A stretch of DNA of 64,000 nt, taken from Malacoraja senta (Eukaryota). The stretch spans positions 43,772,001-43,836,000 of the forward strand of contig CM075983.1 in assembly GCA_038087875.1 (NCBI GenBank). Reading direction: 5' to 3'. The position numbers were made by a program, and so were the translations under genes. The notes beneath the pieces were generated by a model that saw only the letters and a program-made list of their open reading frames with translations, was not told the DNA's origin and did not search any database. This document shows positions 5,796 to 62,775 of the stretch, piece by piece (positions within the stretch are counted from its first letter, which is position 1; the number at the start of each line of letters is the position of its first letter).

Positions 5796-5800
5796 ACTTA

Positions 5801-6596
5801 TGGGCCTGTCCCACTTAGGCGACTTTTTAGGCGACTGCAGGAGACTATGCAGTCGCCACATGGTCGCCACATGTTCTCGCGGGTGGTTGCCGGGGAGCCG
5901 CCTTCATGGTCGTGAGGAGTTCCCACATTCTGGGAACTAGTCGCGGCCTTATTATGGTTGCCGTGAATTTTTCAACATGTTGAAAAATTAGCGGCGACTA
6001 GAATTAAGCCGCCATGGAGAGTAGCGAGAATTCTCGAGCCGTAGGTGGGTCGCCAGGAGGTCCTAATGGATTTCCAGGAGGTCAAAGGTTCTCGGAGGTT
6101 CTCGTAGGTTGTAGCCGGTGCTGACCGGTGAATTTTATTGGCTCATTGGGGATAAAAAGGTAAGCAGTAGTTTTCAAAACCAAGGATAACCGACTGGCAA
6201 TGTTAATATCCGCCGTGCTTCACAGCCGTGTATCTCTGGCTTCTTAAAAGTTATCTCCACTCCTTCTCCCCCGTTCTCTCTCCTCTCCCCCCTCTCCCCC
6301 CTCTTTTAAAGGACTTACCGTACACTATGGTTTAGCTGTCTTTTTACAGCGCCAACCTTCCTGTTCATCGTGGTGTGTGTCTGTTTCACCATGGCTTAGC
6401 ACTGTGTGAATTGTTTAGATAGCGCTCCCCCCACTTGCCCTGTCCCCCACCTGCATAACGGGCTGGTGAAGGAAACGATGTGTTTGTGTGTGTGTTCCAC
6501 TCTGACAGTCGCCGTTCCAGTTGCCGGCTTTTCAGGCGACTGCCGGCGACTTGACAGTCACCGGCAGTCCGCTGAAAAATCGCCTAAGTAGGCCCA
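5801..6596. mobile_element. Non-autonomous PIF/Harbinger-type element
   Basis: TIR TGGGCCTGTCCCACTTAGGCGA; right TIR tcgcctaagt-aggccca lacks 5 bp; flanks TTA (5798-5800) and TAA (6597-6599). Confidence 0.8.
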
Positions 6597-18724: not shown

Positions 18725-18865
18725 NNNNNNNNNNNNNNNNNNNNNNNNNNNNNNNNNNNNNNNNNNNNNNNNNNNNNNNNNNNNNNNNNNNNNNNNNNNN
18801 NNNNNNNNNNNNNNNNNNNNNNNNNNNNNNNNNNNNNNNNNNNNNNNNNNNNNNNNNNNNNNNNN
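18725..18865. other. Assembly gap (141 N)
   Basis: N run. Confidence 1.
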
Positions 18866-21592: not shown

Positions 21593-22408
21593 TACAGGCC
21601 CTACCATAAGTCAACTATTCTCAGTCAGGTCCAGTCACTTGCTGTCAATGATGATTTGGAGAGGCAGAGAGTTGCTGCCTTACAGCGCCAGAGACCCAAG
21701 TTCAATCCTGACTACTGGTGATGTCTGTACAGAGTTTGCACGTTCCCCCTGTGTGCACAGGGGTTTCCTCCAGGTTCACACCAGTTCTATGTTATCCCAC
21801 TTTTGCATCACTACACACTTAATATGCCAGGACTTGTGGTAATTGTAATATGACTTTATTAGTCATATTCAAATCCTTAAAAGCCACCATATCATTTACC
21901 TCCCCACTTGGTTCAGGCTGCTCTATATTACATCTACAATATCCATATGAAACCACTCAAATCCTCTGAACACAAAAAGCCTTTCAATTTTGCACCGTTT
22001 AGAAAATATTTTCTTTATGTACGGGGGTTAATAATAAATCAAATAGGGAATGTAGGAAAGGGTGGTTACGATGTGAAACCTGCTCCAGGTGAGTTGTTCG
22101 GGCAAATGTTTTATTTGGATTCAAGGAGAAAGAAGCAAAAGTTATTCAGGTAAATTAGGTGAAAACACATGGTTCCGGTCTTGAGGGTTTGAAGGATCTC
22201 CTTTTTGTCCACCCACATGAAACAGCTTTAGATTTATTATTGTCATGTGTTCTGAGTTACAGTGAAAACCTTTTGTGTGCATGCTGCCAGTCAAATCAGA
22301 CAATACGTGTCGGAAGGAACTGCAGATGCTGGTTTACACCAAAGATAGACACAAAGTGCTGGAGCAACTCAGCGGGTCAGGCAGCATCTCTGGAGAACAT
22401 GGATATGT

Positions 22409-29123: not shown

Positions 29124-29428
29124 GGGGTGGCACAGTGGTGAAGGGGTAGAGCTGCTACCTTACAGCACCTGAGACCCGGGTTCATCCCTGACTATAGGTG
29201 CTGTCTGTACGGAGATTATACATTCTCCTGTGACCGCGTCGGTTTTCTCCGGCTGCTCCGGTTTCCTCCCACACTCTGAAGACGTACAAGTTTGCAGGTT
29301 AATTGGCTTTGATAAGAATTGTAAATTGTCCCTTTTGCATAGGTTAGTGATATTGTACCGGATCGCATGTCGCGTGGATTATGTGAGCCGAAGGGCCTGT
29401 TTCCACGCTGCATCTCTAAACTAAACTT
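29124..29428 (+). mobile_element. HE1-like V-SINE
   Basis: Full copy. Confidence 0.85.
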
Positions 29429-39399: not shown

Positions 39400-39870
39400 T
39401 CAGTATGGACACAAAAGGCTGGAGTAACTCAGCGGGACAGGCAGCATCTCTGGAGAGAAGGAATGGGTGACGTTTCGGGTCGAGACCCTTCTTCAGACTG
39501 ACAGTGGGGAGTGGGGGGAAGAAAGCTGGTAAAGGCCGAGACACAGGGAAATGTGTGGTAGGTAATAGGTTGACACAGGCGAGGGGGATCTTTTTGACAG
39601 GGAGATAGTTGGAACAAAGGCCAGAGAAAATAACAGTAGTTGTGAAACAAATGTGAAGAGTAGTGGGTTGTGAAGCTAGGGGGAGGAAAGTACTGGGGAG
39701 GGAGACAGGGGATGGGGGTTAGTCGGATGAAAGTGGGGGGTCCAGGTGGGGAACACGATAAGGAAGGGGGGAAGAGAGGGGTGGGATGGGGTTAGTTGGG
39801 GGTTATCTCAACTTGGAGAATTCAATGTTCACATCATTGGGTTGTAAGCTACCTGTGGAATATGAGGTCA
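39400..39870 (-). mobile_element. Penelope 3' remnant
   Basis: End of GIY-YIG ORF (ggagaattcaatgttca...gggttgtaagct), purine-rich UTR, terminal repeat. Confidence 0.8.
39469..39496 (-). ncRNA. Minimal hammerhead ribozyme core
   Basis: Minus strand CTGAAGA-A-GGGTC-TC-GACCC-GAAA-CG-TC, all consensus core positions present. Confidence 0.6.
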
Positions 39871-39924: not shown

Positions 39925-40562
39925 TGGACTTTAGACTTTAGAGATGGAAACAGGTCTTTTGGCCCAATGAGTCTGCACTGACCAGTGATCACCATGTACA
40001 TAAGCACTATCCAACACACTAGGGACAAGTTAAAATTCACAGGAGCAAATTAACCTACAAACCTGCACATCTTTGGGATGTGGGAGCAAAAGGGAGCACC
40101 CGAAAAAAACACATGTGGTCACAGGGAGAATGTACAAACTCTGTACAGATAGCACCCGTAGTCAGGATCGAACCCGGGTCTCTGGTACTGTAATGGCCCT
40201 GTCCCACTGTACGAGTTCATTCAAGAGCTCTCCCGAGTTAAAAAAAAAAATCAAACTCGTGGTAAGCACGGAGAATGAAAGTAGCGGGTACGTCGGAGCT
40301 CGGGGACGTGTCTTAGCGGCTCATAACGCTAACGGCAGGTACTCGGGAAGACCCGCTAACGGCAGGTAAGCTCGGGAAGACTCGTGAAGAATTTTCACCA
40401 TGTTGAAAAATGTCCACAAGAGCCCCGAGTACCGACGAGAGGCCATTACCATAAATCTCCGAGTTCGAATCAGGACAAACTCGGGAGAACTCTTGGAATG
40501 AACGCGTAGAGTGGGACAGGGCTTTAAGGCAGCAACTGTGCTGCTGCGCCAATGTGCCGCAC
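39925..40562 (-). mobile_element. V-SINE interrupted by a MITE
   Basis: SINE sequence is contiguous once 40194-40527 is removed. Confidence 0.85.
40194..40524. mobile_element. PIF/Harbinger-type MITE, 331 bp
   Basis: About 45-bp TIR GCCCTGTCCCACT(G/C)TACG...; TSD TAA (40191-40193, 40525-40527). Confidence 0.9.
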
Positions 40563-41003
40563 CTATCTCATCAGAGTATTTGGATAGATTTGAGTTGGCC
40601 TTCAGCAAGGCAAGTGAATTGCTTTTAGAATTACTTTTAGAATTGCTTTTGGACCTTGCAGAAGATTGTGTGGGAGCCTTGGTCAGTGGATGGCTCCAAG
40701 GCACCGAGGGTTGCAGATACAGTAATGGTGTGGCCCTCCTCTTCTTGCAGAAACCTGTTCATGTCTGCATAAAGAGCAGTTATGGTATGGAGCTGAATGG
40801 TGGGGAGGGCTGCCATCATTATCGGGGTACATGGTCATAGTGGGGTGATCCAAATGTCATCTAGGCCCAGAGGCATGCATGAGAAACAACACTTATTGCT
40901 TCTGCAACCAAAAAAAACAAATTAATTGTGACAAATATTGAGAATTATTTGTATCGCACCTTTATATTAAGCATTTGAAGTGAAACCAATGTTCTTACAT
41001 GCA

Positions 41004-41243
41004 ATTTAGTTTAGAGCTACAGTGTGAAAACAGGCCCTTCAGCCCACCGAGTCGATGCTGACCAGCGATCCCCGCACACTAAGACTATCCTACACACACT
41101 GGGGTCAATTTACTATTATACCAAGCCAATTAGCCGACAAACCTGTGCTGTACGTCTTTGGAGTGTGGGACGAAAGCGGATATCCCAGAGAAAACCCGGG
41201 CAGATCACGGAGAGAACATAAAACTCCGTACAGACAGCACCCG
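41004..41243 (-). mobile_element. V-SINE, 5' truncated
   Basis: Tail and V-domain. Confidence 0.8.
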
Positions 41244-41524
41244 TGGTTGCCATGCTGCGTGTTCTCTTGGGCTGAAGATTGAAGGGGCAATGCTGATAGT
41301 TCAAACAGAAGCTTGACTGCGTGGGTTTTCTCCGGGTGCTCCGGTTTCCCACCAACGATCCAAAGACCTGCAGGTTTATAGGTTAATTTTGACCTCTGTG
41401 AATTACCACTGGTGTGCAGGGAGTGGATGTGAAAGCGGGAGAACTAGTGTGAATGGGTGATCGACAGTCGACGTGGATACGGTGGGCCTACGGGCCATTT
41501 TCCATGCTGTATCTCTAAAACAGA

Positions 41525-41970
41525 TAGACTACGTATGATGAGCATTTGACGGCACTGGGCCTGTACTCCCGGGAGTTTAGAAGGATGAGGGGGGGTGGAC
41601 CTCATTGAAATTTACCGAATAGTGAAAGGCCTGAATAGATTGTGTGCGGAGAAGATGTTTTCATTAGTGGGAGAGTGTAGGACTGGAGGGCATAACCTCA
41701 GAATAAAAGGACGTACCTTTAGGAAGGCGATGAAGAGGAAGTTCTTCAGTCAGAGGATGGTAATTCTGTGGAATTCATTGGCACAGACAGCTGTGGAGGC
41801 CAAGTCATTGGGTATTCTTAGGTGCAGATTGACAGGTTCTTGATTAGTGCGGGTATCAAGGATTATGGGGAGATGGCAGGAGAATAGGGTTAGGAGAACA
41901 AGACAGATCTGCCATGATTGAATGGCAGTGTAGACTTGTTGGCCTATTTCTGCTCCTATGACTTATTATC
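41525..41970 (+). mobile_element. CR1 LINE 3' fragment
   Basis: ORF 41595-41843 DLIEIYRIVKGL...GHNLRIKG...WNSL. Confidence 0.85.
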
Positions 41971-42007
41971 TTGTGGACTTGTGAGACAATGAACGTTTTG
42001 TTGTGAA

Positions 42008-42325
42008 GAACGGTGGTGCAGTGGTAGAGTTGCTGCCTCACAGCGCCAGAGACCCATGTTCCATCCTGACTACCGGTGCTGTCTGTGCAGAGTTTGTGTG
42101 TTCTCCCCATGACCAGCGTGGGTTTTCTCCGGGTGCTCCGGTTTCCTCCCACACTCCAAAGACATACAGGTTTGTAGGTTAATTGGCTTTGGTAACAATT
42201 GCAAATTGTCCCTCGTGTGTAGGATAGGGTTAATGTACAGAGAAGGCTGGTCGCCGCAGACTGGTTGGGCGAAGGGCCTGTTTCCGCGCTGCAGCACTAA
42301 ACTGAACAAAATAATTAAACTAAAA
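42008..42325 (+). mobile_element. HE1-like V-SINE
   Basis: Full copy. Confidence 0.85.
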
Positions 42326-42694
42326 TGGTATCTAAGGTAACCCTAACTCTTCCTCAACAATGACACTGGAGATCCACACATAGTATTAACACAATGGCAT
42401 GATCATTCACTCTGACATGTCATCACCAACTATGGGGAATCTCCTCCACAGCCTAAAGGAACATCCTTTCTGACGCCAATTTGGAGCATGGTCTCTTTCA
42501 TTAAAAAAAACTCCCAGAGATATTCTTGTCGAATTGTTTCTTAGTGAGTCACTTAACAAAGTGCTTGAGACAGTCACTTAAGTGCCAGATGGATAGATAA
42601 GATGCAACTAAGGCCTTTGAGAACACACTCCGGTTTCACTGCTTAAAGAAACTCATAGCATTAATAAAAATGATGTTACGAGAATCGTGTGATG

Positions 42695-42782
42695 GTCTTA
42701 CCTTCCATGCCCTCAAGGTCGGCTGCGCTGGTGCACCCCGGGGCACGGGGATTGAAGATGGCCGGGCGAGGAGAGGGTCGTC
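42695..42782 (+). mobile_element. Third fragment of the GC-rich unclassified repeat
   Basis: tcttaccttccatgccctcaaggtcggctgcg matches 34784-34870. Confidence 0.6.
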
Positions 42783-43834
42783 GGCGCTGTAAAGCAGCAA
42801 CTCTACTACTACGCCACCGTGTCACCCCTAAAATATTTAACGGCAGTAGTCCGGAAGTGTATTAACTGGGCGGCAGGCACAGTGGCACAGCGATAGAGTT
42901 GCTGCCTTGCGACGCCAGGGACCCGGATTCGATCCTGTCCGTGCGGAGTTTATACGTTCTCCGTGTTGGTTTTCTCCAGGTGCTCCAGATTCCTCCCACA
43001 TCCCAAAGACGTACAGGTTTGCAAGTTAGTAGTTGAAACTAAGCTAGGGTGGAAGTGTGAACGGCGAAGAGGATGCTAAGAGGTTGCAGGGTGACTTTGA
43101 CAGGTTGAGTGAGTGGGCAGATGTATGGCAGATGCAGTATAATGTAGATAAATGTGAGGTTATCCACTTTGGCAGCAAGAACAAGGAGGCAGATTATTAT
43201 CTCAATGGTGCCAGATTAGGAAAAAGGAAAGTGCAATGTGACCTAGGTGTCCTTGTACACCAGTCACTGAAAGTAAACATGCAGTTACAGCAGGCAGTGA
43301 AGAAAGCTAATGGCATGTTAGCCTTCATAACGAGAGGATATGAGTATAGGAGTAAAGAGGTCCTTGTGCAGTTGTTCAGGGCCCTGGTGAGACCACATCT
43401 GGAGTATTGTGTGCAGCTTTGGTCTCCTAATTTGAGGAAGGACATTCTTGCTATTGAGGCAGTGCAATGTAGGTTCACGGGGTTAATCCCGGGATTGCGG
43501 GACTGTCATATTCATATTCACTGGAATTTAGAAGGATGAGAGAGGATCTTATATTCACTGGAATTTAGAAGGATGAGAGAGGATCTTATAGAAACATATC
43601 TATATAATTAAAAGTCTTATCTTGACCACTTCCTGTCTGCGCTGCATATTGATTTTAGAAAAAACGCTACCATATATTGCTATGATTTTTGGCCATCTTA
43701 CTCACAGTCCTGCTCCGCTGAGCAGGCCCTGAGGATTTTTCCCATCGATGAAAAATAAAAAAGTTATGAATGTTTAAAAGACCTTGAGATCCTCTTGCCT
43801 GTCAATCACCGCGATGAAGGTAACGCCCCTTCCT

Positions 43835-43900
43835 GGGGGGGCGGGCGGGGGGGGGAGGACTATAAAACCCCAGATGCCTGGACGTGACTCAGCCACTCTG
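43835..43900 (+). promoter_or_regulatory. Putative Pol II core promoter in the Helitron
   Basis: GGGCGG boxes 43839-43848, TATAAAA 43861-43867, CA at 43890-43891 about 30 nt downstream, TGACTCA 43885-43891; motif evidence only. Confidence 0.4.
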
Positions 43901-43999
43901 CAAGATCGCGAGGGAGAGGCCACGAATCACAATCTAAGCTGTGAATCAACTGAAAAGTGAGTCTACAATGTACTTGCAATAAATGATTTGTTAGCCCTT

Positions 44000-46057
44000 A
44001 ATGAAAATGAAATGAGTTGTTTGGCCTGCCCTGTGCTTTGAACTGCAATGGCAATGGAAGTGGAATGAAAATGCAATGGGCTGTTTGGCCTGCCCTGTGC
44101 TTGAAACAGCAATGGCAATGGAAATGAAATGAAAATGCAATCAGCTGTTTGGCCTGCCCTATGCTTGAAACTGCAATGGCAATGGAACTGAAATCAAAAT
44201 GCAATCAGCTCTTTGGCCTGCCCTGTGCTTGAAAATGGAATGGGAATGGAAGTGAAATGGAAATGCAATCAGCAGTTTGGCCTGGCCTTTGCTTGAAACT
44301 GCAATGGCAATGGAAGTGAAAGGGAAATGCAATCAGCAGTTTTGCCTGCCCTGTGCTAGAAACTGCAATGGCAATTGAAGTGAGATGAAAATGCAATCAG
44401 CTGTTTGGCCTGCCCTGTGCTTGAAACTGCAGTGGCAATGGCAATGATATGAAAATGCAATCAGCTGTTTGGCCTGCCATGTGCTTGAAACTGCACTGGC
44501 AATGGAAGTGAAATGAAAAAGCAATCATCTGTTTGGTCTGCCCTGTGCCTGAAACTGCAATGGCAATGGAAGTGAAATGAAGATGCAATCAGCTGTTTGG
44601 CCTGCCCTGTGCTTGAAACTGCAATGGCAATGGAAGTAATATGAAAATGCAATCGGCTCTTTGGCCTGCCCTGTGCTTGAAACTGCAATGGCAATGGAAG
44701 TGAAATGTAACTGCAATGAGCTGTTCAGCCTACCCTGTGCTTGAAATTGCAATGTCAATGGAAGTGAAATGAAAATGCAATGAGCTGTTCGGCCTGCCTT
44801 GCTCTTGAAACTGCAATGTTTGGCCTCCTCTGTGCTTGAAACTGCAATGACAATGGTAATGAAATGATAATGCAATCAGCTGTTTGGCCTGCCATGTGCT
44901 TGAAACTGCACTGGCAATGGAAGTGAAATGAAAAAGCAATCATCTGTTTGGCCTGCCCTGTGCCTGAAACTGCAATGGCAATGGAAGTGAAATGAAGATG
45001 CAATCAGCTGTTTGGCCTGCCCTGTGCTTGAAACTGCAATGGCAATGGAAGTAATATGAAAATGCAATCGGCTCTTTGGCCTGCCCTGTGCTTGAAACTG
45101 CAATGGCAATGGAAGTGTATGAAAATGCAATCAGCTGTTTCGCCTGCCCTGTGCTTGAAACTGCAATGGCAATGGAAGTGAAATGAAATTGCAATCAGCT
45201 GATTGGCCTGCCCTGTGCTTGAAACTGCAATGGAAGTGAAATGAAAATGCAATCAGCTGTTCAAACTGACCTGTGCTTGAAACTGCAATGGCAATGGAAG
45301 TGAAATGAAAATGCAATCAGCTGCTCGGCCTGCCCTGTGCTTGCAACTGCAATGGCAATGGAAGTGAAATGAAAATGCAATGAGCTGTTCGGCCTGCCCT
45401 GTACTTGAAACTGCAATGTTTGGCCTGCCCTGTGCTTGAAACTGCACTGGCAATGGAAATGAAATGAAAACGCAATCAGCTGTTCGGCCTGCCCTGTGCT
45501 TGAAACTGCAATGGCAATGGAATTGAAATGAAAATGAAATCTGCTCTTTGGCCTGCCCTGTGCTTGAAACTGCAATGGCAATGGAAGTGAAATGAAAATG
45601 TAATCAGTTGTTTGGCCTGCCCTGTGCTTCAAACTGCAATGGCAATGGAAGTAATATGAAAATGCAATCGGCTCTTTGGCCCGCCCTGTGCTTGAAACTG
45701 CAATGGCAATGGAAGTGAAATGAAAATGCAATCAGCTGTTTGACCTGCCCTGTGCTTGAAACTGCAATGGCAATGGAAGTGAAATAAAAATGCAATGAGC
45801 TGTTCGGCCTGCCCTGTGCTTGAAACTGCAATGGCAATGGAAGTGAAATGAAAATGCAATGAGCTGTTCGGCCTGCCCTGTGCTTGAAACTGCAATGGCA
45901 ATGGAAGTGAAATGAAAACGCAATGAGCTGTTCGGCCTGCCCTGTGCTTGAAACTGCAATGGCAATGGAAATGAAATGAAAATGCAAAGAGATATTTGGC
46001 CTGCCCTGTGCTTGAAATTGAAATGGAAATGAAATAAAATGAGTTGTTTGGCCTGCC
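44000..46057. repeat. 64-bp tandem satellite, about 32-33 units
   Basis: Consensus TGTTTGGCCTGCCCTGTGCTTGAAACTGCAATGGCAATGGAAGTGAAATGAAAATGCAATCAGC. Confidence 0.97.
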
Positions 46058-46500
46058 AGAAACCACAAATTTCGGCCCACAAGGCCCCTATTAGCCGAAA
46101 AACCATTCCCTTTTGCCCAAAATGCCCGTATTAGCCTAGGAGGGGCATTTTGGCCCAAAAGGCCCATGCCAGGCCAGGAAAAGTCCTGAAAAAATGCCTT
46201 TCACAGAGATTTCACAGATTTTTTTTAAGTGCCCCTTCGGCACATCAGGCCTGTACTAGCACAGGAGGCGACCCTTCAGCCCATCAGTAAGTATTCCCCC
46301 TGCAAGTATTAAACCTCACCCCAGTATTTTTCTCCCTCCCTTCATTGGCTCCCTGTGAGTTCCAGGCCAGGGTGGACTTTCCTCCTTCATTGCTGTGATC
46401 TGTAGAAAAAATGAAAAATGTCTTAAATTGATTCTCCACCCTCTCCCCCTTCTCTCTCACAGATTCTCTCACCTGTTTTGGGCAGAATTCCTGGCAGTTT

Positions 46501-46666
46501 CTGAGCTGCCAGCCCACCAGGCCTGAGTGACTGAGCTGCCACCCCACTGGGCCTGAGTGACTGAGCTGCCAGCCCACCAGGCCAGAGTGACTGAGCTGCC
46601 AGCCCACCAGGCCTGAGTGACTGAGCTGCCAGCCCACCAGGCCTGAGTGACTGAGCTACCAGCCCA
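46501..46666. repeat. 30-bp tandem repeat, 5.5 units
   Basis: CTGAGCTGCCAGCCCACCAGGCCTGAGTGA. Confidence 0.97.
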
Positions 46667-47864
46667 AGAATTCATTTGGCCCACAATATCCATACTAGCC
46701 CTCTGGTAACCAGTCCCTTCGACCCATAACACCCATACTAGCACTCCAGAACCCCCCCCCCCCCCACTGGCCACCAATATTGGAATTGGTGGAGAGGTGG
46801 AATATTGCGTTGGGGGACCATCCCTCCGTGTGAACATGGGACCCAACTGGTCCCAGTTAGTCTAGTAAAATTATAAAAGGACTAGACAAGCTAGATGCAA
46901 GAAAAATGTTCCCAATGTTGGGGGAGACCAGAACCAGGGGCCACAGTCTAAAAATAATGGGGAGGCCATTTAAAACTGGGATGCAAAAAAAAATTCTCAC
47001 CCAGAGAGTTGTGAATTTATGGAATTCTCTGCCACAGAAAGTAGTGGAGGCCAATTAACTGGATGAATTTAAAAGAGAGTTAGGTAGAGCTCTAGGGGCT
47101 AGCGGAATCAAGGGGTATGGGGAGAAGGCAGGCATGGGTTACTGATTGTGGATGATCAGCCATGATCACAATGAATGGCGGTGCTGGCTCAAAGGGCCAA
47201 ATGGCCTCCTCCTGCACCTATTTCTGTTTCTATGTTTAACAGGCCTCGGTAAATTGCCCCTAGTGTGTAGGGAGTCGATGTGAAATTGGGATAACATAGG
47301 AACTAGTGATCATTGGCTATGCAGACTCGATGGACACCCAAGGTCAGGATCGAACCCGGGTCTCTGACGCTGTCAAGCAGCAACTCGACTGCTGCCCAAC
47401 AAAAAGTGCGCAAAAATAAAGAATCTCACTGGACCTTAGTATACGTAATAATAAAAGAACCGTTGAACCATTGATGAGATCATGTAACAACTACATCACT
47501 GTATCCAAACTTAATAACATTGTCCATGGTCAACACTTGAATGAAAGGTGACCCTCCAAGTTATAGGTGAATGGGGTAAGCTGGTGTTGTTATAGTTCCT
47601 GCTTTCCAGCAGGGGCTGCTGAGATGCTCTGTGCCTTCTTGAAAGCAGCAAACATCAGAACTGTCAGCGGCGTAACTAAAGGCATTGGAAATCACAAATC
47701 CTCACTTCTCACTTAGCATTTTTGTGGAATGCAATCTGTCACATTACAGCGTTCTCCAGCTCTGGGCTGCTGACAGTGTCAATCAGCCTGGCAGCATGCA
47801 GGGAGAAGCCAAGCTGACAGACACTTTTCATTAGCAATTAATTGCACATGGATGGCTCGAGCGT

Positions 47865-48258
47865 NNNNNNNNNNNNNNNNNNNNNNNNNNNNNNNNNNNN
47901 NNNNNNNNNNNNNNNNNNNNNNNNNNNNNNNNNNNNNNNNNNNNNNNNNNNNNNNNNNNNNNNNNNNNNNNNNNNNNNNNNNNNNNNNNNNNNNNNNNNN
48001 NNNNNNNNNNNNNNNNNNNNNNNNNNNNNNNNNNNNNNNNNNNNNNNNNNNNNNNNNNNNNNNNNNNNNNNNNNNNNNNNNNNNNNNNNNNNNNNNNNNN
48101 NNNNNNNNNNNNNNNNNNNNNNNNNNNNNNNNNNNNNNNNNNNNNNNNNNNNNNNNNNNNNNNNNNNNNNNNNNNNNNNNNNNNNNNNNNNNNNNNNNNN
48201 NNNNNNNNNNNNNNNNNNNNNNNNNNNNNNNNNNNNNNNNNNNNNNNNNNNNNNNNNN
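47865..48258. other. Assembly gap (394 N)
   Basis: N run. Confidence 1.
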
Positions 48259-49516
48259 TATAAAACTAAACCTGAGTGGTAAAAACGAAAAAATCCATTA
48301 CAAAGTGCTAAATGAGGTTCATGATGAGGGATGCTAAATGCTGCCAGATAGTTTAATGAGTTTGTCTTCCAAGCAACCTCACATTCCTACTCTTTCTGAA
48401 AGTAATTAAGCAATTGACAATGAAGATGCAATTCCCAGACGTGGTAATGAGATGCTGTGAGAGCACAGATCCCACCAGAAGGGATTGCTTATTAAATATT
48501 TATTGTGTGTGTAGCTTCATCGCTCGTACTACAAAGCACAGGGCTCTTTCAGTGAATACTTGTCTCCTGCTTTACAAGACCAGTGTAATCATTCTAAAGA
48601 TCAATATTTCATTGTACATGTTAATTGTTTGTAAAGCAAAAAGCCGCCACTGTACGTGACACCTGCTACTGCTCAAAGCCTCGCTCGGCCGATCCGTGGG
48701 TGGAGTGAGGGCAATGTTATTGGTCGGTTTAATGAGTCTCGCAAGATAAATGTTACCCTCTCCGGGATGTGTGTCGGAGTACTAGTGGTGGTTAACTTCA
48801 CTCCAAGGCTGTGGTCTCGGGCTGAATACCAACAACTTCTCAGCACACCATGTTGCATTTGCAACTCGGCGAGAGAGAGGAAAAAAATAAATTGAATGCA
48901 GGAGCAGTCATTTAACAGGGGAGAGCTTTAGATTTACGAAGCATTCATCCACCGACCAGGGCTAAATCAAATACCGCGAATGAAAATGGATTTAACAAAT
49001 TAGAGTGCGTGTAGCATTGTTTCACATGGTGCTCTTCAGCTTTGCATATATGATCTTGCACTGCATACTACCCAATTAATTCACAGAATACAGTGGGGAT
49101 TTCAGGCACCTCTGTTCCTCAATGCTTTGCATAGCTCATTATATTTGGCACCACTATCTGTGTACAATTACTGGAACATAAAGGCATCCACACCAATATT
49201 TTTTTCAATACTCTGACCTAAATGTAGCATTTTCATTTTGTTCGACTTTTAATAAAATATTTACAATGTTCGTCAGTTTCACAAAGATGTTGGTGCGAAA
49301 ATCTGCCTTTGATAACACATTTTACATCCATTCAAAAAAAAGGATTTCATTGCCAGAGGAAAATGGTCCACTTCAGCACTTGGAGTAGTGAAAACAGCAG
49401 GCATAATGCAGAGGAGATTTAATGCAGTGATATATTACAGGAGGAAGAATGAGGAGAGGCAAGATAAACTCGATTATACAATTTTATACAGCAGGAGCAA
49501 ACAAAATCAGGATAAA

Positions 49517-50135
49517 GGGCAACACAGTTGCACAGCTGGTAGTTCAGTTTAGCTTAGAGATACAGTGCGGAAATAGGCCCTTCAGCCCACTGAGTCCACG
49601 CTGACTAACGATTCCGGCACACTACCACTATCCTACACACTAGGGATAATTGACAATTTTATCAAATCCAATTAAGCTACATACTGTACGTCTTTGGAGT
49701 GTGGGAGGAAACTGGAGCACCCGGAGAAAACCCACGCAGAACGTACAAACTCTGTACAGACAGCACCCATAGTCAGGATCAAACCCGGGTCTCTGGTGCT
49801 GTAAGGCAGCAAAGCTACCGCTGCACAATTGTGCTGCCCATACCGCTGCCTCCTCACAGTGCCAGAGACCAGGGTTTCATCTTGACCTCGAGTGCTGTCT
49901 GTGTGGAGTTTGCACGTTCTCCCTGCGACTGTGTGGGTTTCCTCCGGGTGCTCCGTTGTCCTCCCACATCCCAGAGACGTGTGGGTTTGTAGGTTAATTG
50001 ACCCTCTGTAAATGGCCCCGAATCTGTAGGATGCAAAAGTGGGTTAACATAGAACTAGTGTGAATGGGTGATCAATGGTCGGTGTGGAATTGGTGGGCTG
50101 AAGGGCCTGTTTCCATTCTGTATCTTTCAATCAAA
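49517..50135. mobile_element. Plus-strand SINE split by a minus-strand SINE (about 49543-49840)
   Basis: Plus head gggcaacacagttgcacagctggtag resumes at ccgctgcctc after the reverse copy. Confidence 0.8.
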
Positions 50136-50619
50136 CAAAAAACTTTGAAGGGTGAACAAAAAACGTGTAATCCTTGGTCTTTAGCATAGAACCTTCTAGT
50201 GCAAAAGCAAAGAGGTAATGACAATGTTTTAACTTGCACTGATACACTCTCATCTTCAGGAAGAGTAACTAATTATCTTGTTATTTTCCTTGTCACCAAA
50301 ACGAATGAGAGGCAGGATTTATTTCCATGGCATTTCTCAAACATCACAGAGTTCTTTGCAATCAGTGCAGTAATTGAAATGATGGTGGTGTTGAAATGTA
50401 GGGATTGTATCTTTACTGTTGTAAATTGCCAGGCAATCTACACTCAACCCACAATGTTAAAATGGATGAATATTAAATTGGGAGTTAAATATTAGACAGA
50501 AATAGGCCAGGATAGAGTGGATGTGGAGAGGATGTTTCCACTATTGTGGGAGTGTAGGACTAGAGGGCACAGCCTCGGAATAAAAGGACGCACCTTTAGA
50601 AAGGAGATGAGGAAGAATT

Positions 50620-51900
50620 TAGAAACATAGAAAAATAGGTGTAGGAGTAAGCCATTCGGACCTTTGAGCCAGCACCACCATTCAATATGATCATGGCTGA
50701 TCATCTAAAATCAGTACCCCATTCCTGCCTTTTTCCCAATATCCCTTGATTCTTTTAGCCCTAAGAGCTAAATCTAACACTCTTGAAAACATCTAGTGAA
50801 TTGGCCTCCACTGCCTTCTGTGGCAGATAATTCCACAGATTCACAACTCTCTGGGTGAAAACGTTTTTCTTCATCTCAGTCCTAAATGGCCTACCCCTTA
50901 TGCTTAACTGTGACCTCTGGTTCAGGATTCCCCCAACATTGGAAAAAAATCCTGCATCTAGCTTGTCCAATCCTTTAAGAATTGTATATGTTTCTTTAAG
51001 ATATCCTCTCATCCTTCATAAATTCCAGTGAATACAAGCTCAGTCGACCTATTCTTTCAACATACGTCAGTCCCACCATCCCGGGAATTAACCTGGTGAA
51101 CCTCCGCTGCACTCTCTCAATAGCAATAATATCCTTCCTCAAATTAGGAGACCAAAATTGCACACAATACTCCAGGTGCAGTCTCACGAGGGCCCTATAC
51201 AACTGCAGTAGGACCTCCTTACTCCTAAACTCAAATCTTCAAAACCAACATGCCATTATCTTTCTTCTCTGCCTGTTGTACCTGCATGCTTACTTTCAGT
51301 GACTGATGTACAAGCACACCCAGGTCTCGTTGCACCTCCCCTTTTCTTAATCTGACACCATTCAATTAATAATCTGCCTTCCTGTTCTTGCCACCAAAGT
51401 GGATAACCTCACATTTATCCACATTATACTGCATCTGCCATGCATCTGCCCACTCACCTAACCTATCCAAGTCACCCTGCAGCCTCATAGCATCCTCATC
51501 ACAGCTCACACTGCCACCCAGCTTTGTGTCATCCGCAAACTTGGAGATGTCACATTTAATTTCTCACTTCTAAATCATTAATATATATTGTAAATAACTG
51601 GGGTCCCAGCACCGACCCTTGCATCACCCCACTCACTAGTCACTGCCTGCCATTCTGAAAAGGACCTGTTAATTCCTACTCTTTGCTTCCTGTTTGCCAG
51701 CCAGTTCTCTATCCATGTCAATACCCTACCCCCAATACCATGTGCTCTAATTTTGCACACTAATTTCTTGCGTGGGGCCTTGTCAAAGGCTTTTTGAAAG
51801 ACCAGATACACCACATCCACTGGCTCTCCCTTATCCATTCTATGTGTTACATCCTCAAAAAATTCCCGAAGATTAGTCAAGCATGATTTCCCCTTCATAA
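50620..51900 (-). mobile_element. CR1 LINE with degenerate RT, nested in a plus-strand CR1 fragment (50500-50619, 51901-52130)
   Basis: FMKGKSCLTNLREFFEDVT...VDVVYLVFQKAFDK; LVRLHLEYCVQFWSP. Confidence 0.92.
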
Positions 51901-52159
51901 AGAATAGGATGGTGAATGTGGAATTCATTGCCACAGACGGCTGTGGAGGCCAAGTCGTTGGGTATTCAAAGATTGACATATTCTTGATTAGTACGGTGTC
52001 AGGGATTATGGGCAGAAAGCAGGAGAATGGTTTAGAGTGGGTAAGATTGTAGTAGTCTTGATGGGCTGAATGGTGGAGTAGTCTTGATGGGCTGAATGGC
52101 CAAATTCTGCTCCTATAACTTATTACTTATGAAAACTAGGAATACTTCCTCAAGCAAAA

Positions 52160-52432
52160 TGCAAAGAGCTGGAGGAAGTCACCAGGTCAAGCAGCATCTG
52201 TTATGGAAATGGACAGATGACATTTTGGGTCCGAACTTTCTTCAGACTGATTCTTGTGTGAAGTCTGAAGAAGTGTCATGATAAAACATTGCCTGTACAA
52301 TCTGCCTGAAGAAGGGTCCCGACCCGTGATGTTGCCTGTCCATTCTCTCCCCAGATGCTGCCTAATTCTCAGATTTACTTGAGCTCTTTGTGTTTTGCTC
52401 AAGACTCCTGCATCTGCAGTTCCTTGTGACTC
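52160..52432. mobile_element. Penelope-derived fold-back
   Basis: Inverted terminal arms with degenerate ctgaagaaggg motifs. Confidence 0.7.
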
Positions 52433-53134
52433 TCTGATGCATGTTAATAGATTCAGAATTTGCATACTTAAAGTGGTCAACAAACTGAAACAGGTTGACA
52501 TACAAACCTCTGAAGATGTATTAGAGTAATTAACAACAGTGCAAAGGAAATGAATGAGCTGGTGAAGTAAATATGACACAATCACTTTCACTGTGGGTAA
52601 CCACACACATGCATTTTGACAACACAACCCTTAATAAAGACAGACGCTTGGTGCTGGAGTAACTCAATTGATCAGGCAGCATCTCTGGTGAACATGGATA
52701 GGTGACGTTTCGAATAGGGACCCTTCTTCAATCTGATTGTGGTGGAGGGGTGCGAAAGTTGGAGAAGAGGTGGAGGCAGGACAAGGTCTGGCAAGTGATA
52801 GGTGGATACAGGTGAAGAAGTAGTAACAAGGACATGCAAATGGGGAGGCGGGAAGGCGGGGCAGTGAGAAAAGGCCAGAACAAATCAGGGCCAGCAACAG
52901 GTGACCTCAGGAAGGGTGGAGTCCATCATTTATGTCAGTGTTCTTTGTTTAATTTAGTTTTAGTTTAGAGACACAGCATGGAAGATTCCAGCATTTTTAT
53001 TCTCTTGAGACTTGTTATTGAGCAAATTAATGGCTACCTGACAATATCTCCTCGATTTCTTTGGTGATGGTTTATTTTTGATGAAGTATCTTGTTTCTTT
53101 TTCTGTTTTGAGGATGGTTTATAAGTGTGAGGAA

Positions 53135-53420
53135 ACACTGTGTCCACGCAGACCAGCAATCACCCGTTCACACTAGCTCTATGTTGTCCCACTTTCGCAT
53201 CCACTCCCTACACACTAGGGGCAATTTACAGAGGGCCAATCAACCTACAAACCCACAAGTCTTTGGGATGCGGGAGGAAATTGGAGTACCCAGAGGAAAC
53301 CCACGCGGTCGCAGGGAGAACATTGCAACTCCACACAGACAGCACCCGAGGTTGGAATCGAACCCAGGTCTCTGGTGCTGTGAGGCAGCAGCTCTGCCAG
53401 CTGCATCACTGTGCTGTCCC
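53135..53420 (-). mobile_element. V-SINE
   Basis: Reverse copy. Confidence 0.85.
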
Positions 53421-53848
53421 TGTGAATTTTAATTTCTGGTAACTCTACATACAGCTCACAGCAACTGACAAAACAAATAATGCTTTGATTGTTTTTGTCG
53501 ACTGCATTATTCAAAGCATCGTTTAACAAGAATGAATTTGATAATAAACAGATGTTTATAATTTTCACATATTGCTGTGATTTCATAGCTATAATTCACG
53601 GGTAATATATGATTTACAAATCCAATATTATGCAAGAGGACATAATCAAAGACTGTAGCAGATAATACAGAATCTCTCAGTCTCAATAATTGCAGTGATG
53701 GTGTTGATAAAATTCATAATTAAAATAAAACATTGATTTGATATATTCCCCAAGATTACATGATGATATAGCTTTCATTGGTCCTTTACTGCCTGTGATA
53801 AAATGATTAAATTAATGCATTGACTTTTTTTCGATCCATGTTTTATAA

Positions 53849-54148
53849 GGTGGTCACGGTGGCGCAGCAGTAGAGTTGCTGCCTTACAGTGAATGCAGCG
53901 CCGGTGACCCGGATTTGATCCCGACTACGGGTGCTGTCTGTACGGAGTTTGTACGTTCTCCCCGTGACCTGCGTGGGTTTTCTCCCACACTCCAAAGACG
54001 TACAAGTTTGTAGGTTAATTGGCTTGGTAAATGGAAAAATTGTCCCTAGTGGGTGTAGGATAGTGTTAATGTGCGGGGATCGCTGGTCGGCGTGGACCAA
54101 AGAGCCTATTTCCGCGCTGTATCTCTAAACTAAACTAAACTAAACTAA
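53849..54148 (+). mobile_element. HE1-like V-SINE, young and CpG-rich
   Basis: Full copy, (ctaaa)n tail. Confidence 0.9.
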
Positions 54149-54169
54149 AAGACATCCATGTACCTCAGA

Positions 54170-54775
54170 ATACAAGGATGTACCTTTTAAAATAAGATGA
54201 GGGGGAATTTCTTTATTGTGGTGAATCTGTAGAATTCATTGCTACAGACGTCTGTGGAGACCAGGTCATTGGGTATTTTAAGGCAGTGATCGACAGATAC
54301 TTGATTGGTATGGGTGTCAAGGGTAATGGGGAAAAGGCAGGAGAATGGGGTTGAGAGGAAAAGCTACATCAGCCATGTTTGAATGGTGGACTAGGCTACA
54401 TGGGCTCTTATGAACTCATGAAAATCATGAGGTGAAAAGTTAAGGTAAATGCACAGACTTTTTCCCAGAGTAGGGGAATCAAGAACCGGAGGATGTGGAT
54501 TTAAAGTAAGTGGAGAAAGATTTTTTAAAAACCTGAGGGGCAACTTTTTCACACAGAAGGTAGTAGATATATGAAACGAGCTGCGAGAGAAGGTAGTTGA
54601 GGCAGCTACTACCACAACATTAAAAAAACAAATTTGGATAGATACATGGATTGGAAAGGTTTAGACAGGTATGAGTCAAACGCAGGTAGGTGGGACAAGT
54701 GTAGATGGGGCATCTTGGTCGCCATCAAGAAGTTGGGCCGAAGGGCTTGTTTCCAGACCGTGTGGCTCCATGACA
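54170..54775 (+). mobile_element. Two CR1 3' fragments
   Basis: Two different CR1 tails in tandem. Confidence 0.75.
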
Positions 54776-54859
54776 CAGGCACATAATTTAGCAATTCTGA
54801 TCAATACCTTCATGTATAAGACAACTTGTAAAAATAAAAAAACTGTAGATACCTGCAGA

Positions 54860-55173
54860 GGGCGGCATGGTGGTGCAGAGCCAGAGTTGCTAACTTACAG
54901 TGCCAGAGACCAGGGTTTGATCCTAAGTACAGGTGCTGTTTGTACGGAATTTGTACGTTCTCCTCATGACCCGGGTTTTTCCTGGGTGATCCAGTTTCCT
55001 CCCACATCCAAATACATGCAGGTTTGTAGGCTGATTGGCTTCAGTAAAGATTGTGAATTATCCCTGTTGTGTAAGATAGTGCTGGTGTACAGAGAGCGCT
55101 GGTCAGCGTGGACTCGGAGAGCCGTAGGGCCTGTTTCCACTTTGTATCTCTAAACTGAATTAAGCTAAACTAA
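54860..55173 (+). mobile_element. HE1-like V-SINE
   Basis: Full copy. Confidence 0.85.
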
Positions 55174-55489
55174 ATACTGAAATTTGGAACAAAAATTGCA
55201 GGAAGATGAAAGTCAGGCTGCATCTATGGCACGAGAAACAGATTAAATCTTTCAAGTGGAAGATTTTTTGTCAGAACACACCTGTTGAGTATTTCCAGCA
55301 CGTTTTGCTTTTATAAAAGACATCTTGTTGGTTAAACGGTTACTCATGGAAATAAATGATTCACACCTGATGGGTGAATTTTTGAACCACTGTTATAGTT
55401 TAATTCCCTTTGCATAAATAGTACATTTGGGATCTCTGCAGCATTTGAGCCCAGGTAAATGGTCCCCCTGGTCATTATGTAACCATCGT

Positions 55490-55785
55490 GTAGCCACACT
55501 CAAATTGGACGAACAGCATCTCATATTTCGCTTGGGCAGCTTACAACCCAGTGGTATGAACATTGAACTCTCTAACTTTAACTAACTTCATCTCATACTT
55601 CCCAGCCCTTCCCCCTCCCTCTTTGCCCCCTTCCTCCTCCCTCATTCTTTTACGAGTTCCACAGTTCTCCACATTGTTTCTCTTGAGATCACACATCTAC
55701 GAGACACTGCCCTACCGAAACGTCACCCATTCTTTTTCTCCCGAGATGCTATCTGTCCCGCTGAGTTACTCCAGTACTTTGTGAT
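55490..55785 (+). mobile_element. Penelope 3' remnant
   Basis: gaacagcatctcatatttcgcttgggcagcttacaacccag and terminal repeat. Confidence 0.75.
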
Positions 55786-56164
55786 ATCTTCATGTCACAT
55801 ACCAACATGGGACCACCTCAACGTCTTGAGGTTTAGGTTTATTATTGTCTTGTGTAGTGAAAAGCTTTTGTTTGCATTCCATCCAATCAAATCAGATAAA
55901 CAACAGAAGACACGAAGTGCTGAAGTAATTCAACGGGTCAGGCAGCATCTCTGGAGAACATGGACAGGTGACGTTTCAGGTCAGGACCCTCCTTCAGATG
56001 AATGTAGAGAGGGAAAGGAAAGCTGGAAGAGATGAGGGGCAGGACAAAGGCTGGAAGGTTTTTTGATAGGCAGATGTTTGGACAAAAGCCTGAGATGAAA
56101 AGACAGAAGGTGTGATTATAAAACAACATCTGGAGTTCCTTGTTTCTACAGTTAATACTAGACA

Positions 56165-56550
56165 TGAATCCAATCAAGCCCAACTCAAGCACTCCAGGCA
56201 GAGCAAAGAGAAAGGTACCAGAGTGCAGAATATAGTTCTTTGCATTTTAGTGTAACTGTTCCAGAAAAAAGTCCAATGTCTGCAATAAGGTAGAGGAGAA
56301 TTGGACAGTCCCCTCGCTTATGAAAGGACCATTCAGAAGTCTGATAACAGAGGGGAGGAAGTCATTCCTGAGTTTAGTAGTTTGCGTTTTCAAGCTTCTG
56401 TATCTTCTACCCATTGGGAGGTGAAAAGATCTTTGATTATGTTGGCTGCTCTCCCAAGGCAGTGTGAAGTGTAGATGGTGGAGAGTCTGGTCTGTGTGAT
56501 GGACTAGGCTACATCTACAAGTCTCTGCAATTTCTTGTAGTCTTGGGCAG
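56165..56550 (-). mobile_element. Rex1/Babar fragment
   Basis: Homologous to 37470-37760. Confidence 0.75.
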
Positions 56551-57292
56551 CAGGTGTGGGAGCGGCATCACCTGCAAACACCTATTTTGTCCCGGAAGTG
56601 GTACAGTGACGCAGCTGCCAGGGCCACTGCCTCACAGCATCAGAGACCTAGGTTCGATTCTGACCTCGGTTGCTGTCAGTGTGGAGCTTCCACGTTCTCC
56701 CTGTGACCGTGTGGGTTTTCTACGGGTGCTCTACTCTCCTCACACATCCCAAAGACGTGCGGGTTAGTAGGTTAAATGTATCAGGTGTAAATAAACATGA
56801 TAACTAGTGAAACTGACAAAGTGCTGGAGCAACTCAGCGGGTCAGGTAACATCTGTGGAGAGGATGCGCAAATGACATGTCTGGTTGGGACCCTTCATCA
56901 GTGTGGTGGGGGGTGGGGGTTGAGGAAGCTGGCAAAGGGATTGGGACAAAGTCTGGCAAGTGATAAGTGGATACAGGTGAGGGGGTGGGCTTGTTTGAAT
57001 TACAGATGAAATTGCAGAGTAGATGAAAAAGGCTGGAAATGAAAAGGAGACAAATGGGTGCCAGATAACGTGAGAAGAGTGAAATATTTTAGTTTAGTTT
57101 AGTTTATTATTGTTACATGTATCAAGGTACAGTGACATTTTTTTTTTTTGGTACATGCTATCTATTCAGCATAAAGAGTATACATGATTACAGTCAAACC
57201 GTCCACAGTGTCCAGATACCAGACAAAGGGAAATGTAAAACTGGAGGGAGGGATGGGATGAAAAGGGACATGGGGAAAGAGGTGGATAAAAG

Positions 57293-57845
57293 GGGAGGCA
57301 CGGTGGTGCAGCAGTAGAGTTGCTGCCTTAAGGGCCTGTCCCACTTTCACGACCTAATTCACAACCTTTTTTACGTGGACATTTTTCATCAGGCTAGAAA
57401 AACGCCCCGACCTACTTGATTTCACGAGTACCTACGACTAGCATCACGACCTACCTACGACCTCCTACGACCTCGTGACGACCATGCTGCGAGTATGAGT
57501 CAAGGCAAACTCGGCATAGGTCGTGAATTAGGTTGTGAAAGTGGGACAGGCCCTTTACAGCGCTAGAGACCTAGGTTCGATCCTGATTATGGGTGCTGTC
57601 TATATGGTGTTTGTACGTTCTCCCTGTGACGTGCATGGGTTTTCTCTGGGTGCACCGGTTTTCTCCCACACTCCAAAGACATACAGGTTTGTATGTTAAT
57701 TGGCTTCTGTAAATTGTAAATTGTCCCTAGTGTGTGTAGGATAGCATTGGCGTTCGGGTTGATCACTGGTTGGCGAGGACTCAGTGGGCCGAAGGGCTTG
57801 TTTCCACTCTGTATCTCTAAACTCTAAACTAAACTAAACTCTAAA
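57293..57845 (+). mobile_element. V-SINE interrupted by a MITE
   Basis: gctgcctta|cagcgc rejoins after MITE removal. Confidence 0.88.
57331..57554. mobile_element. PIF/Harbinger-type MITE, 224 bp
   Basis: 37-bp TIR AGGGCCTGTCCCACTTTCAC(G/A)ACCTAATTCAC(A/G)ACCT; TSD TTA (57328-57330, 57555-57557). Confidence 0.92.
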
Positions 57846-58434
57846 AAGGAAATAGTGGATTGGGGAGATGAGTGTATGGAGGAGGTCAATATGCTCTCTG
57901 CCGTACACCTGTAGAACTTCAAGAGCATTAAAATCTAAGGGGTTTACACTGATAGGAGCCCAGGGACCTTATGATCTCCTATTTGTTTCACATAGAGCTT
58001 TACGCTAAACCTACTTCACAGAGTGCTGGATTAGTGCAACATGATTGCTACTTCTAGTTCAAATCAATAATTCATACCTTGAATTATTTTGCATTTTAAA
58101 CTTCAGTTTTTGAGATTAATAATAAAAAAAATTAGGAAAGCCTTTTGCAGAAATTCAAGTTTATGTTTGTTAAGTAAATAATTTATTAAAATCAAAATTA
58201 ACATCATATTTTCCTTCATGTACATACAGCAGTTCATTTTCAGAAAGAAAGCATGGTAATGCATTATTAATCACTTTATTATTCAATTTATACTTTAAAA
58301 TAATTTTACATGGTTAATTTAGTCATCAAAACTTTAAATAAAACATTAGCTAAATAGGCTGTGGCAAAGGCAGCCAATTCAATTCAACAAAAACATTAAG
58401 CATAAACATTTAACTTTATCCAACACTGATTTGA

Positions 58435-62469: not shown

Positions 62470-62775
62470 AGGCACGGTGGCGCAGCGGTAGAGTTGCTGC
62501 CTCACAGAGCCAGAGACATGGGTTCAATTCTGACCACAGGTGCTGTCTATATGGAGTTTGTACGTTCACCCTGTGACCACATAGATTTTCTCCGGGTGCT
62601 CCTGTTTCTTCCCAAACTGCAAAGACGTGCCGGTTTGTAGGTTAATTGGCTTCGGTAAATTGTCCCTGATGTGTAGTCTCACATAGAACTAGTGTAGGGG
62701 GTAATTGTTAGTCGGCGCGGACTCGGTAGGCCGACAGGGCCTGTTTCCACGCTCTATCTCTAAACTAAACTAAAC
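62470..62775 (+). mobile_element. HE1-like V-SINE
   Basis: Full copy. Confidence 0.88.

What the first reader, a model, noticed from the sequence alone, without database searches (positions are those of the whole stretch)
40191..57557. Two different Harbinger-type MITEs hit the same nucleotide of the SINE tRNA-like head
Seen: the 331-bp MITE (40194-40524, minus SINE) and the 224-bp MITE (57331-57554, plus SINE) both duplicate the TTA of GCTGCC-TTA-CAG between the A and B boxes. Their interiors differ, so these are independent events; that is 2 of the 3 such elements in a window full of TWA sites. Known: Harbingers have extended target consensus sequences, and some DNA transposons (Dada) target tRNA/snRNA genes. 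Inference: SINE heads act as a preferred safe-harbour target, and insertion would separate the Pol III boxes and likely disable the SINE. Only two cases, so tentative.
Basis: partly seen in the sequence, partly recalled or inferred. Interest (0 to 1): 0.7.

Follow-up and report, generated by a model that had tools for sequence, protein, structure and literature searches.

The report
Two MITEs, same SINE head site
Two different miniature cut-and-paste transposons in this skate genome sit at exactly the same TTA inside two separate copies of the commonest SINE. This most likely reflects the known extended target taste of Harbinger transposases, but a genome-wide preference could not be shown here.

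Summary
A 331-bp MITE (40194-40524) and a 224-bp MITE (57331-57554) each carry a clean 3-bp TTA/TAA duplication. Both split GCTGCC-TTA-CAG in two SINE copies that are 78% identical, between A-box-like and B-box-like motifs. The MITEs share a 13-15 bp terminus and little else, so these are two separate insertions. The assembly gap (47865-48258) lies between the sites and touches neither.

With insertion uniform over TWA sites, 2 of 3 elements at this site has P about 2e-4, or about 3e-3 for any shared SINE coordinate. About three of the 1,201 windows read in this genome would show that by chance.

Contigs from four related organisms show the 224-bp family is very abundant and younger than its host SINE. 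Other copies lie at the same SINE junction, and others in non-SINE flanks. The fraction in SINE heads could not be measured.

My best reading (about 0.55) is ordinary extended target preference of PIF/Harbinger transposases. The motif, perhaps GCTGNN-TTA-C, occurs here only in SINE heads and Penelope repeats. That makes the SINE a frequent landing site, not a purpose-built safe harbour. It is not Dada-like.

The scan has noted similar site-specific Harbinger hits in Penelope repeats elsewhere in this genome.

The parts
40194..40524 (.). MITE 1, 331 bp, Harbinger/Tourist-type. Termini are TGGCCCTGTCCCACT and AGTGGGACAGGGCTT. It has CTCGGG-type subterminal repeats and a central TTTTCACCATGTTGAAAAAT motif.
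   Evidence: 27-nt arms, 93% complementary; only short ORFs; no protein relatives.
40191..40193 (.). Target-site duplication TAA (TTA on the SINE strand), left copy of site 1.
   Evidence: the matching copy is at 40525-40527.
40525..40527 (.). Target-site duplication TAA, right copy of site 1.
39940..40558 (-). Host SINE copy 1, split by MITE 1. The head with the A-box-like motif is at 40528-40558 (motif 40541-40551). The B-box-like motif is at 40165-40175, and the body runs down to about 39940.
   Evidence: BLAST against the other SINE copy; 78% identity to host SINE 2 over 250 nt.
57331..57554 (.). MITE 2, 224 bp, Harbinger/Tourist-type. Both termini are a perfect AGGGCCTGTCCCACT, and it has ACGACC-type subterminal repeats. 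The family is high-copy in four related organisms.
   Evidence: 38-nt arms, 95% complementary; (depth, and only 3 fixed differences from the family majority).
57328..57330 (.). Target-site duplication TTA, left copy of site 2.
57555..57557 (.). Target-site duplication TTA, right copy of site 2.
57296..57850 (+). Host SINE copy 2, split by MITE 2. The A-box-like motif is at 57304-57314 and the B-box-like motif at 57574-57584. The tail of AAACT repeats ends near 57850.
   Evidence: (at least 6 of 118 body positions differ from the SINE majority letter).
5801..6150 (+). Third element with the same terminus (TGGGCCTGTCCCACT), placed after a TTA (5798-5800) in the tail of another SINE copy. No right terminus was found, so the end coordinate is approximate. 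It shares a 20-nt central motif with MITE 1.

Best explanation
Two non-autonomous PIF/Harbinger (Tourist-like) MITE families share the same terminal 13-15 bp, and so probably the same or closely related transposases. Each was pasted independently into an already old copy of the genome's dominant SINE.

Harbinger transposases choose TWA within a longer preferred sequence. The stretch GCTGCC-TTA-CAG in the SINE's anticodon-loop-like region fits that preference, and in this genome such sequences exist almost only inside repeats. The SINE head is therefore a frequent landing site as a by-product of an extended target consensus multiplied by SINE abundance.

Shown: the anatomy, that the two events are independent, and that MITE 2 is younger than its host SINE. 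Inferred: the extended preference itself and its strength. The effect on the SINE copy is a split promoter and internal Pol III terminators. It is real but probably irrelevant, because the host copies were already diverged.
For: - The 3-bp TTA/TAA duplications and the restored empty sites are clean.
- The termini are shared but the interiors and subterminal repeats differ.
- Host SINEs are 78% identical, while the MITE interiors are close to random to each other. A single ancestral composite is therefore excluded.
- MITE 2 differs from its family majority at 3 fixed positions of 224. Its host SINE body differs at 6 or more of 118.
- With insertion uniform over TWA sites, the chance of 2 of 3 elements at this site is 2e-4.
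- GCCTTACAG occurs 7 times and GCTGCCTTA 9 times in the window, always in SINE heads.
- GCTGNNTTAC occurs 21 times against 2 expected, all in SINE heads or Penelope pLTRs. Other readers report Harbinger MITEs repeatedly at one TTA/TAA of that pLTR (their site was not checked).
- Contigs from other loci join the MITE right end, or only its 15-nt terminus, to the SINE body at the same point: X15 records 11 and 12, and X8 records 29-31. One non-SINE copy is flanked by GCTGCCTTA (X15 record 9).
- PIF/Harbinger elements are known to have 9-15 bp extended insertion preferences (PMC2836001).
Against: - There are only two events.
- About three of the 1,201 windows read in this genome should show two elements at one SINE coordinate by chance. 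No other window note reports MITEs in SINE heads.
- For a family this abundant, some SINE-head copies are expected even without any preference. The junction contigs therefore do not discriminate, and the table keeps the longest pieces, which favours SINE-flanked ones.
- The third element sits at a different kind of site (GAC-TTA).
- Four SINE TWA coordinates are commonest in the window (30, 30, 26 and 22 sites) and all are unoccupied. That fits a preference, but the sample is tiny.
- The flanks are not palindromic around the TTA, unlike the classic PIF target.
- No autonomous Harbinger was found in the window, so the superfamily assignment rests on the TSD and the termini alone.
Confidence: 0.55

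Rival explanations
1. Chance coincidence. The MITEs insert at TWA sites with no useful further preference. SINEs fill 16% of the sequence, and the scan read enough windows for two elements to fall on one SINE coordinate somewhere.
For: - Summed over all SINE TWA coordinates and the three element pairs, P is 2.8e-3. Multiplied by 1,201 windows with notes, that is about 3 expected cases.
- No other note reports MITEs in SINE heads.
- MITE copies with non-SINE flanks exist: X1 record 8, X2 record 17, and X8 records 25 and 28.
- The third element lies elsewhere.
Against: - Every characterised PIF/Harbinger element has an extended preference (PMC2836001), so a flat TWA model is unlikely to begin with.
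- All three elements lie in SINE sequence, where only 13% of TWA sites lie.
- Other windows of the same genome were flagged for repeated Harbinger hits at one pLTR site that shares GCTGNNTTAC.
- Unaided readers surely miss most such cases, so a single report does not mean a single occurrence.
Confidence: 0.3
2. Targeting is not by local sequence. It goes through the Pol III machinery or chromatin on SINE heads, through the small hairpin GCTG-CCTTA-CAGC, or through a terminus-like motif in the SINE body (AAGGGCCTGTTTCCAC) that recruits the transposase. This would be a true transposon-targeting transposon.
For: - The site lies between the A-box-like and B-box-like motifs, in a 4-bp stem with a 5-nt loop.
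- The SINE 3' region carries GGGCCTGT..CCAC, close to the MITE terminus. The third element sits 28 bp past such a motif.
- Dada shows that DNA transposons can target small-RNA genes (PMC3706591).
Against: - Tethered elements insert near their targets, not at one exact internal position, according to the discussion in PMC3706591. Here the same nucleotide is hit.
- The host copies were old and diverged when hit, so active Pol III loading on them is doubtful.
- Nothing here tests binding.
- The motif resemblance could be chance (roughly 1% for an 8-mer in a 300-bp element).
Confidence: 0.08
3. The SINE-MITE composites were copied as units, by retroposition or by segmental duplication. On this view the shared position reflects descent and not repeated insertion.
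For: Paralogous contigs with the same junction exist.
Against: - The two window cases hold different MITE families in SINEs only 78% identical, which requires two separate insertions.
- In the SINE's direction, both MITEs contain T5-T11 runs that would stop Pol III.
- Cut-and-paste moves only what lies between the termini.
- MITE 2 is less diverged from its family than the SINE is from its own.
Confidence: 0.03

Closest known systems
Extended target-site preference of PIF/Harbinger elements (maize PIF and rice mPing 9 bp; zebrafish Harbinger3_DR about 15 bp)
   Same: Both show a 3-bp TTA/TAA duplication, GG(G)CC-type termini and small non-coding Tourist-like derivatives. Both also show repeated use of one sequence context (PMC2836001).
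   Different: Here the candidate context sits inside a high-copy SINE, so the preference would appear as SINE targeting. The preference itself is not demonstrated. The flanks are not symmetric around the TTA.
Nested-MITE insertion preference in maize and rice (Jiang and Wessler 2001, as summarised in PMC5172404)
   Same: In both, MITEs land inside other repeats by independent events, and some repeat families are favoured targets.
   Different: That summary says insertions into class I elements were surprisingly rare. Here the host is a class I SINE, and the same nucleotide is hit.
Dada DNA transposons that target tRNA and snRNA genes
   Same: Both insert at a fixed internal position of a multicopy, Pol III-type sequence.
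   Different: Dada makes 6-7 bp duplications and belongs to a different transposase superfamily (PMC3706591). Here the duplication is a 3-bp TWA, the host is a SINE and not a gene, and many copies lie elsewhere.
Site-specific Tx1 LINE inside a Harbinger MITE in this same genome (scan note s1-140279)
   Same: Both are cases of one mobile element using a fixed site in another abundant element.
   Different: The roles are reversed, with a retroelement inside a DNA element. That note reports near-exclusive specificity, which I did not check.

Membership tests
PIF/Harbinger (Tourist-like MITE) | 3-bp target-site duplication of TWA (TTA/TAA) | tested here: met
   There is a TAA on each side of 40194-40524 and a TTA on each side of 57331-57554. 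Empty SINE heads carry a single TTA.
PIF/Harbinger (Tourist-like MITE) | Terminal inverted repeats, small size and no coding capacity | tested here: met
   Arms are 27 nt and 38 nt at 93-95% complementarity. Sizes are 331 and 224 bp. Only short ORFs are present, with no relatives.
PIF/Harbinger (Tourist-like MITE) | An autonomous partner with the same termini that encodes a DDE transposase and a Myb-like protein | not tested
   There is no Harbinger transposase domain among 148 ORFs of the window. The rest of the genome could not be searched.
PIF/Harbinger (Tourist-like MITE) | Insertion preference extending beyond the 3-bp duplication | tested here: inconclusive
   Two of two complete elements share 6 bp or more on the left flank and 3 bp on the right. 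One non-SINE contig copy has a GCTGCCTTA flank. The third element does not share the flank. The sample is too small.
tRNA-derived SINE | Internal Pol III A and B boxes at tRNA-like spacing | tested here: met
   The head consensus read as loose ends gives TGGCGCAGCGG (10 of 11 matches to TRGCNNAGTGG) and GGTTCGATCCT (10 of 11 to GGTTCGANNCC). The box consensus sequences are from my own knowledge. The window copy at 57304-57314 reads tggtgcagcag. The two motifs are about 32 bp apart before insertion.
tRNA-derived SINE | Head recognisable as a tRNA by structure-aware models | tested here: not met
   ARAGORN finds no tRNA in the window. Rfam gives no tRNA match at the gathering score, nor at E<=10 on the consensus-like copy at 21630-21760.
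Dada | 6-7 bp target-site duplication inside a small-RNA gene | tested here: not met
   The duplication is 3 bp, and the host is a SINE copy and not a gene (PMC3706591).
piggyBac | TTAA target duplication | tested here: not met
   The empty sites read CCTTACAG, with no TTAA. The right flank of site 2 would read TTTA.
Strictly site-specific transposon | Nearly all copies at the one target | tested here: not met
   The third element is at another site. Contigs show family copies with non-SINE flanks (X1 record 8, X2 record 17, X8 records 25 and 28).

The most novel reading that the evidence does not exclude
A lineage of skate PIF/Harbinger transposases has a long, asymmetric target motif (about GCTGNN-TTA-CA). 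In this genome the motif exists almost only in the head of the dominant SINE and in Penelope terminal repeats. A sizeable share of tens of thousands of MITE copies would then be parked inside other transposons. That would be a cut-and-paste element using retroelements as its main landing pads.
Probability: 0.3. Interest if true: 0.55.

Novelty: new member of a known kind. Interest (0 to 1): 0.3.

Why it matters
If the preference is real and strong, it would give a vertebrate example of a DNA transposon whose insertions are channelled into other repeats. That would help explain how very abundant MITEs are tolerated in a gene-poor, SINE-rich skate genome. It would also offer a defined, naturally abundant target sequence for studying how Harbinger transposase or its Myb-like partner reads DNA beyond the TWA. 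If it is chance, the finding is just two nested repeats.

Tried and rejected
1. Measuring the share of MITE copies in SINE heads from public runs. All the runs are short Logan contigs, and depth there is summed k-mer depth. The depth step at 57329 coincides with the TTA/TCA split between SINE subfamilies, and I take it to be contigs ending at that branch. The piece table keeps only the longest alignments. No fraction could be derived. An apparent 20-40% 'junction depth' was rejected as uninterpretable.

2. Fetching more copies with flanks by exact-pattern scans of metagenome, viral and bacterial contig collections, using the MITE terminus and the SINE head as patterns. There were no hits.

3. 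Reaching skate contigs through spurious ORFs of the MITE and of the MITE-SINE junction in the protein word search. There were no candidates, so that collection seems to hold no such ORFs.

4. Looking for a real gene or a Harbinger transposase in the window, to use as a handle on other loci. Only faint GIY-YIG and RVT_1 traces, which look Penelope-like, turned up.

5. Literature searches for this terminus or for MITEs in cartilaginous-fish SINEs. Nothing specific was found.

6. piggyBac (TTAA) and Dada readings were rejected on the size of the duplication.

7. Composite amplification was rejected for the two window cases.
Full report
**What is there**

The window is repeat-rich DNA of a skate-like cartilaginous fish. 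It is 44% G+C and has two N runs, at 18725-18865 and 47865-48258. The second N run lies between the two sites of the finding, more than 7 kb from either. Nothing in the claim depends on continuity across it, and I did not try to fill it.

Both insertions are as described.
- Site 1, + strand: TAA (40191-40193), a 331-bp element from TGGCCCTGTCCCACT to AGTGGGACAGGGCTT (40194-40524), then TAA (40525-40527).
- Site 2: TTA (57328-57330), a 224-bp element with a perfect AGGGCCTGTCCCACT at both ends (57331-57554), then TTA (57555-57557).

The inverted-repeat arms are 27 nt (93%) and 38 nt (95%). [quoted passage not shown] That is what intact copies of the same SINE show.

The host SINE is on the minus strand at site 1 and on the plus strand at site 2. 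The triplet lies between an A-box-like motif (40541-40551; 57304-57314) and a B-box-like motif (40165-40175; 57574-57584).

The label 'tRNA-like' rests on those motifs only. ARAGORN and Rfam do not see a tRNA.

**How many elements**

The core CCTGTCCCACT occurs exactly at five places, which are the ends of three elements. The third starts at 5801, after a TTA in the tail of another SINE copy. It has no recognisable right end.

A scan of all TWA pairs for flanking inverted repeats found no further convincing element. So both complete elements of this kind in the window sit at the same SINE nucleotide.

**Independence of the two events**

The two MITEs share their termini and little else. Their subterminal repeats differ (CTCGGG-type against ACGACC-type). 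Their interiors score only z 2.8 and 5.5 above shuffles. The two host SINE bodies are 78% identical over 250 nt.

A single ancestral composite cannot give well-conserved SINE parts around unrelated MITE parts, so two insertion events are needed.

Read in the SINE's direction, both MITEs contain T5-T11 runs. By established knowledge these terminate Pol III, so retroposition of the composite from the SINE promoter is unlikely.

Laying contigs of four runs from four related organisms on 57226-57675 showed the following:
- The 224-bp family is very abundant in all four runs.
- The window copy differs from the family's majority letter at only three essentially fixed positions of 224 (57421, 57422, 57517).
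- The host SINE body differs from the SINE majority at six or more positions of 118.

The MITE therefore entered an already aged SINE copy.

**Is it more than chance?**

After removing the two insertions, the window has 2,174 TWA sites. Of these, 280 lie in SINE sequence (SINEs cover 16% of the bases) and 18 are at this coordinate.
- With insertion uniform over TWA sites, two of three elements at this coordinate has P = 2.1e-4.
- Two at any one SINE coordinate has P = 2.8e-3.

The scan holds notes on 1,201 windows of this genome, so about three such coincidences are expected by chance. No other note reports MITEs in SINE heads. The window alone therefore cannot settle the matter.

**The read data**

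One search shows contigs from other loci that run from the MITE's right end into the SINE body at the same junction: X15 record 11 and X8 record 29. Others begin exactly at the inner edge of the shared 15-nt terminus and continue into the SINE: X15 record 12 and X8 records 30 and 31. The latter are what other families with the same terminus would look like.

One search also shows copies whose flanks are not SINE: X1 record 8, X2 record 17 and X8 records 25 and 28. One further copy has a flank that matches only GCTGCCTTA (X15 record 9).

A family this abundant should have some SINE-head copies even without a preference, and the table keeps the longest pieces. These data therefore show recurrence, not enrichment. 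I could not turn the depths into a fraction.

**Most likely mechanism**

PIF/Harbinger elements have an insertion preference that extends 9-15 bp around the TWA (PMC2836001).

In this window, GCCTTACAG (7 occurrences) and GCTGCCTTA (9) occur only in SINE heads. The looser GCTGNNTTAC occurs 21 times against 2 expected, always in SINE heads (12) or in Penelope terminal repeats (9). Other first readers flagged Harbinger MITEs repeatedly at one TTA/TAA of that Penelope repeat. I could not see which triplet they meant, so this link is only a lead.

I rate a transposase with such a preference, meeting a genome in which the motif lives in repeats, as the best explanation at about 0.55. Chance is the main rival at about 0.3.

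Targeting through the Pol III machinery, the small hairpin or a terminus-like motif in the SINE body is possible but untested (about 0.08).

'Safe harbour' describes a possible consequence. It is not a demonstrated adaptation.

**Comparison with known systems**

On the size and sequence of the duplication and on the termini, the elements qualify as Tourist-like Harbinger MITEs. The autonomous partner was not found.
- They are not Dada, which makes 6-7 bp duplications (PMC3706591).
- They are not piggyBac, because the empty site has no TTAA.
- They are not strictly site-specific.

MITEs nested in other repeats, with favoured targets, are known from plants (PMC5172404).

This is at most a new example of a known behaviour, with a SINE as the carrier of the target. 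I found no paper on it in the held library.

Noticed in passing
window 57793-57808, 55127-55141, 29394-29407, 62738-62751, 5757-5773: The conserved 3' region of the SINE carries AAGGGCCTGTTTCCAC. This resembles the MITE terminus AGGGCCTGTCCCACT: GGGCCTGT is identical, and CCAC follows after a 2-nt offset. The third MITE sits 28 bp downstream of such a motif.
   Followed up: partly
window 39431-39441 and about 55760 (minus strand); general form GCCTGACCCGCT in about 25 Penelope repeat copies: The Penelope terminal repeat holds CCTGTCCCGCT or CCTGACCCGCT, one or two mismatches from the MITE terminal core. It lies three bases from the repeat's TAA (GCTGAG-TTA-C on the other strand).
   Followed up: partly
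window-wide (21 sites listed, in coordinates with the two MITEs removed): GCTGNNTTAC is ten times over-represented (21 against 2 expected). It is confined to SINE heads and to two positions of the Penelope terminal repeat.
   Followed up: yes
window 53855-53935 (extra letters at about 53889-53897): This SINE head has nine extra bases directly after the same TTA (gctgccTTAcagtgaatgCAGCGCC). It may be a local duplication or a repair scar at the hotspot.
   Followed up: no
window 40318-40378: MITE 1 contains a tandem duplication of about 28 bp (cgctaacggcaggta..ctcgggaagac, twice).
   Followed up: no
window 40386-40412 and 5958-5990: MITE 1 and the third element share a 20-nt central palindromic motif, TTTTCA(A/C)CATGTTGAAAAAT (95% over 20 nt). 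This suggests related parent elements despite otherwise different interiors.
   Followed up: partly
window 44023-46009: There is a long tandem array with a 64-bp period (GGCCTGCCCTGT recurs every 64 bp). It lies inside the region another reader called a Helitron.
   Followed up: no
window-wide; one ORF each among the 148 scanned: There are faint GIY-YIG (E 1e-4) and RVT_1 (E 8e-4) matches, consistent with decayed Penelope-like elements. No intact protein-coding gene was detected.
   Followed up: partly
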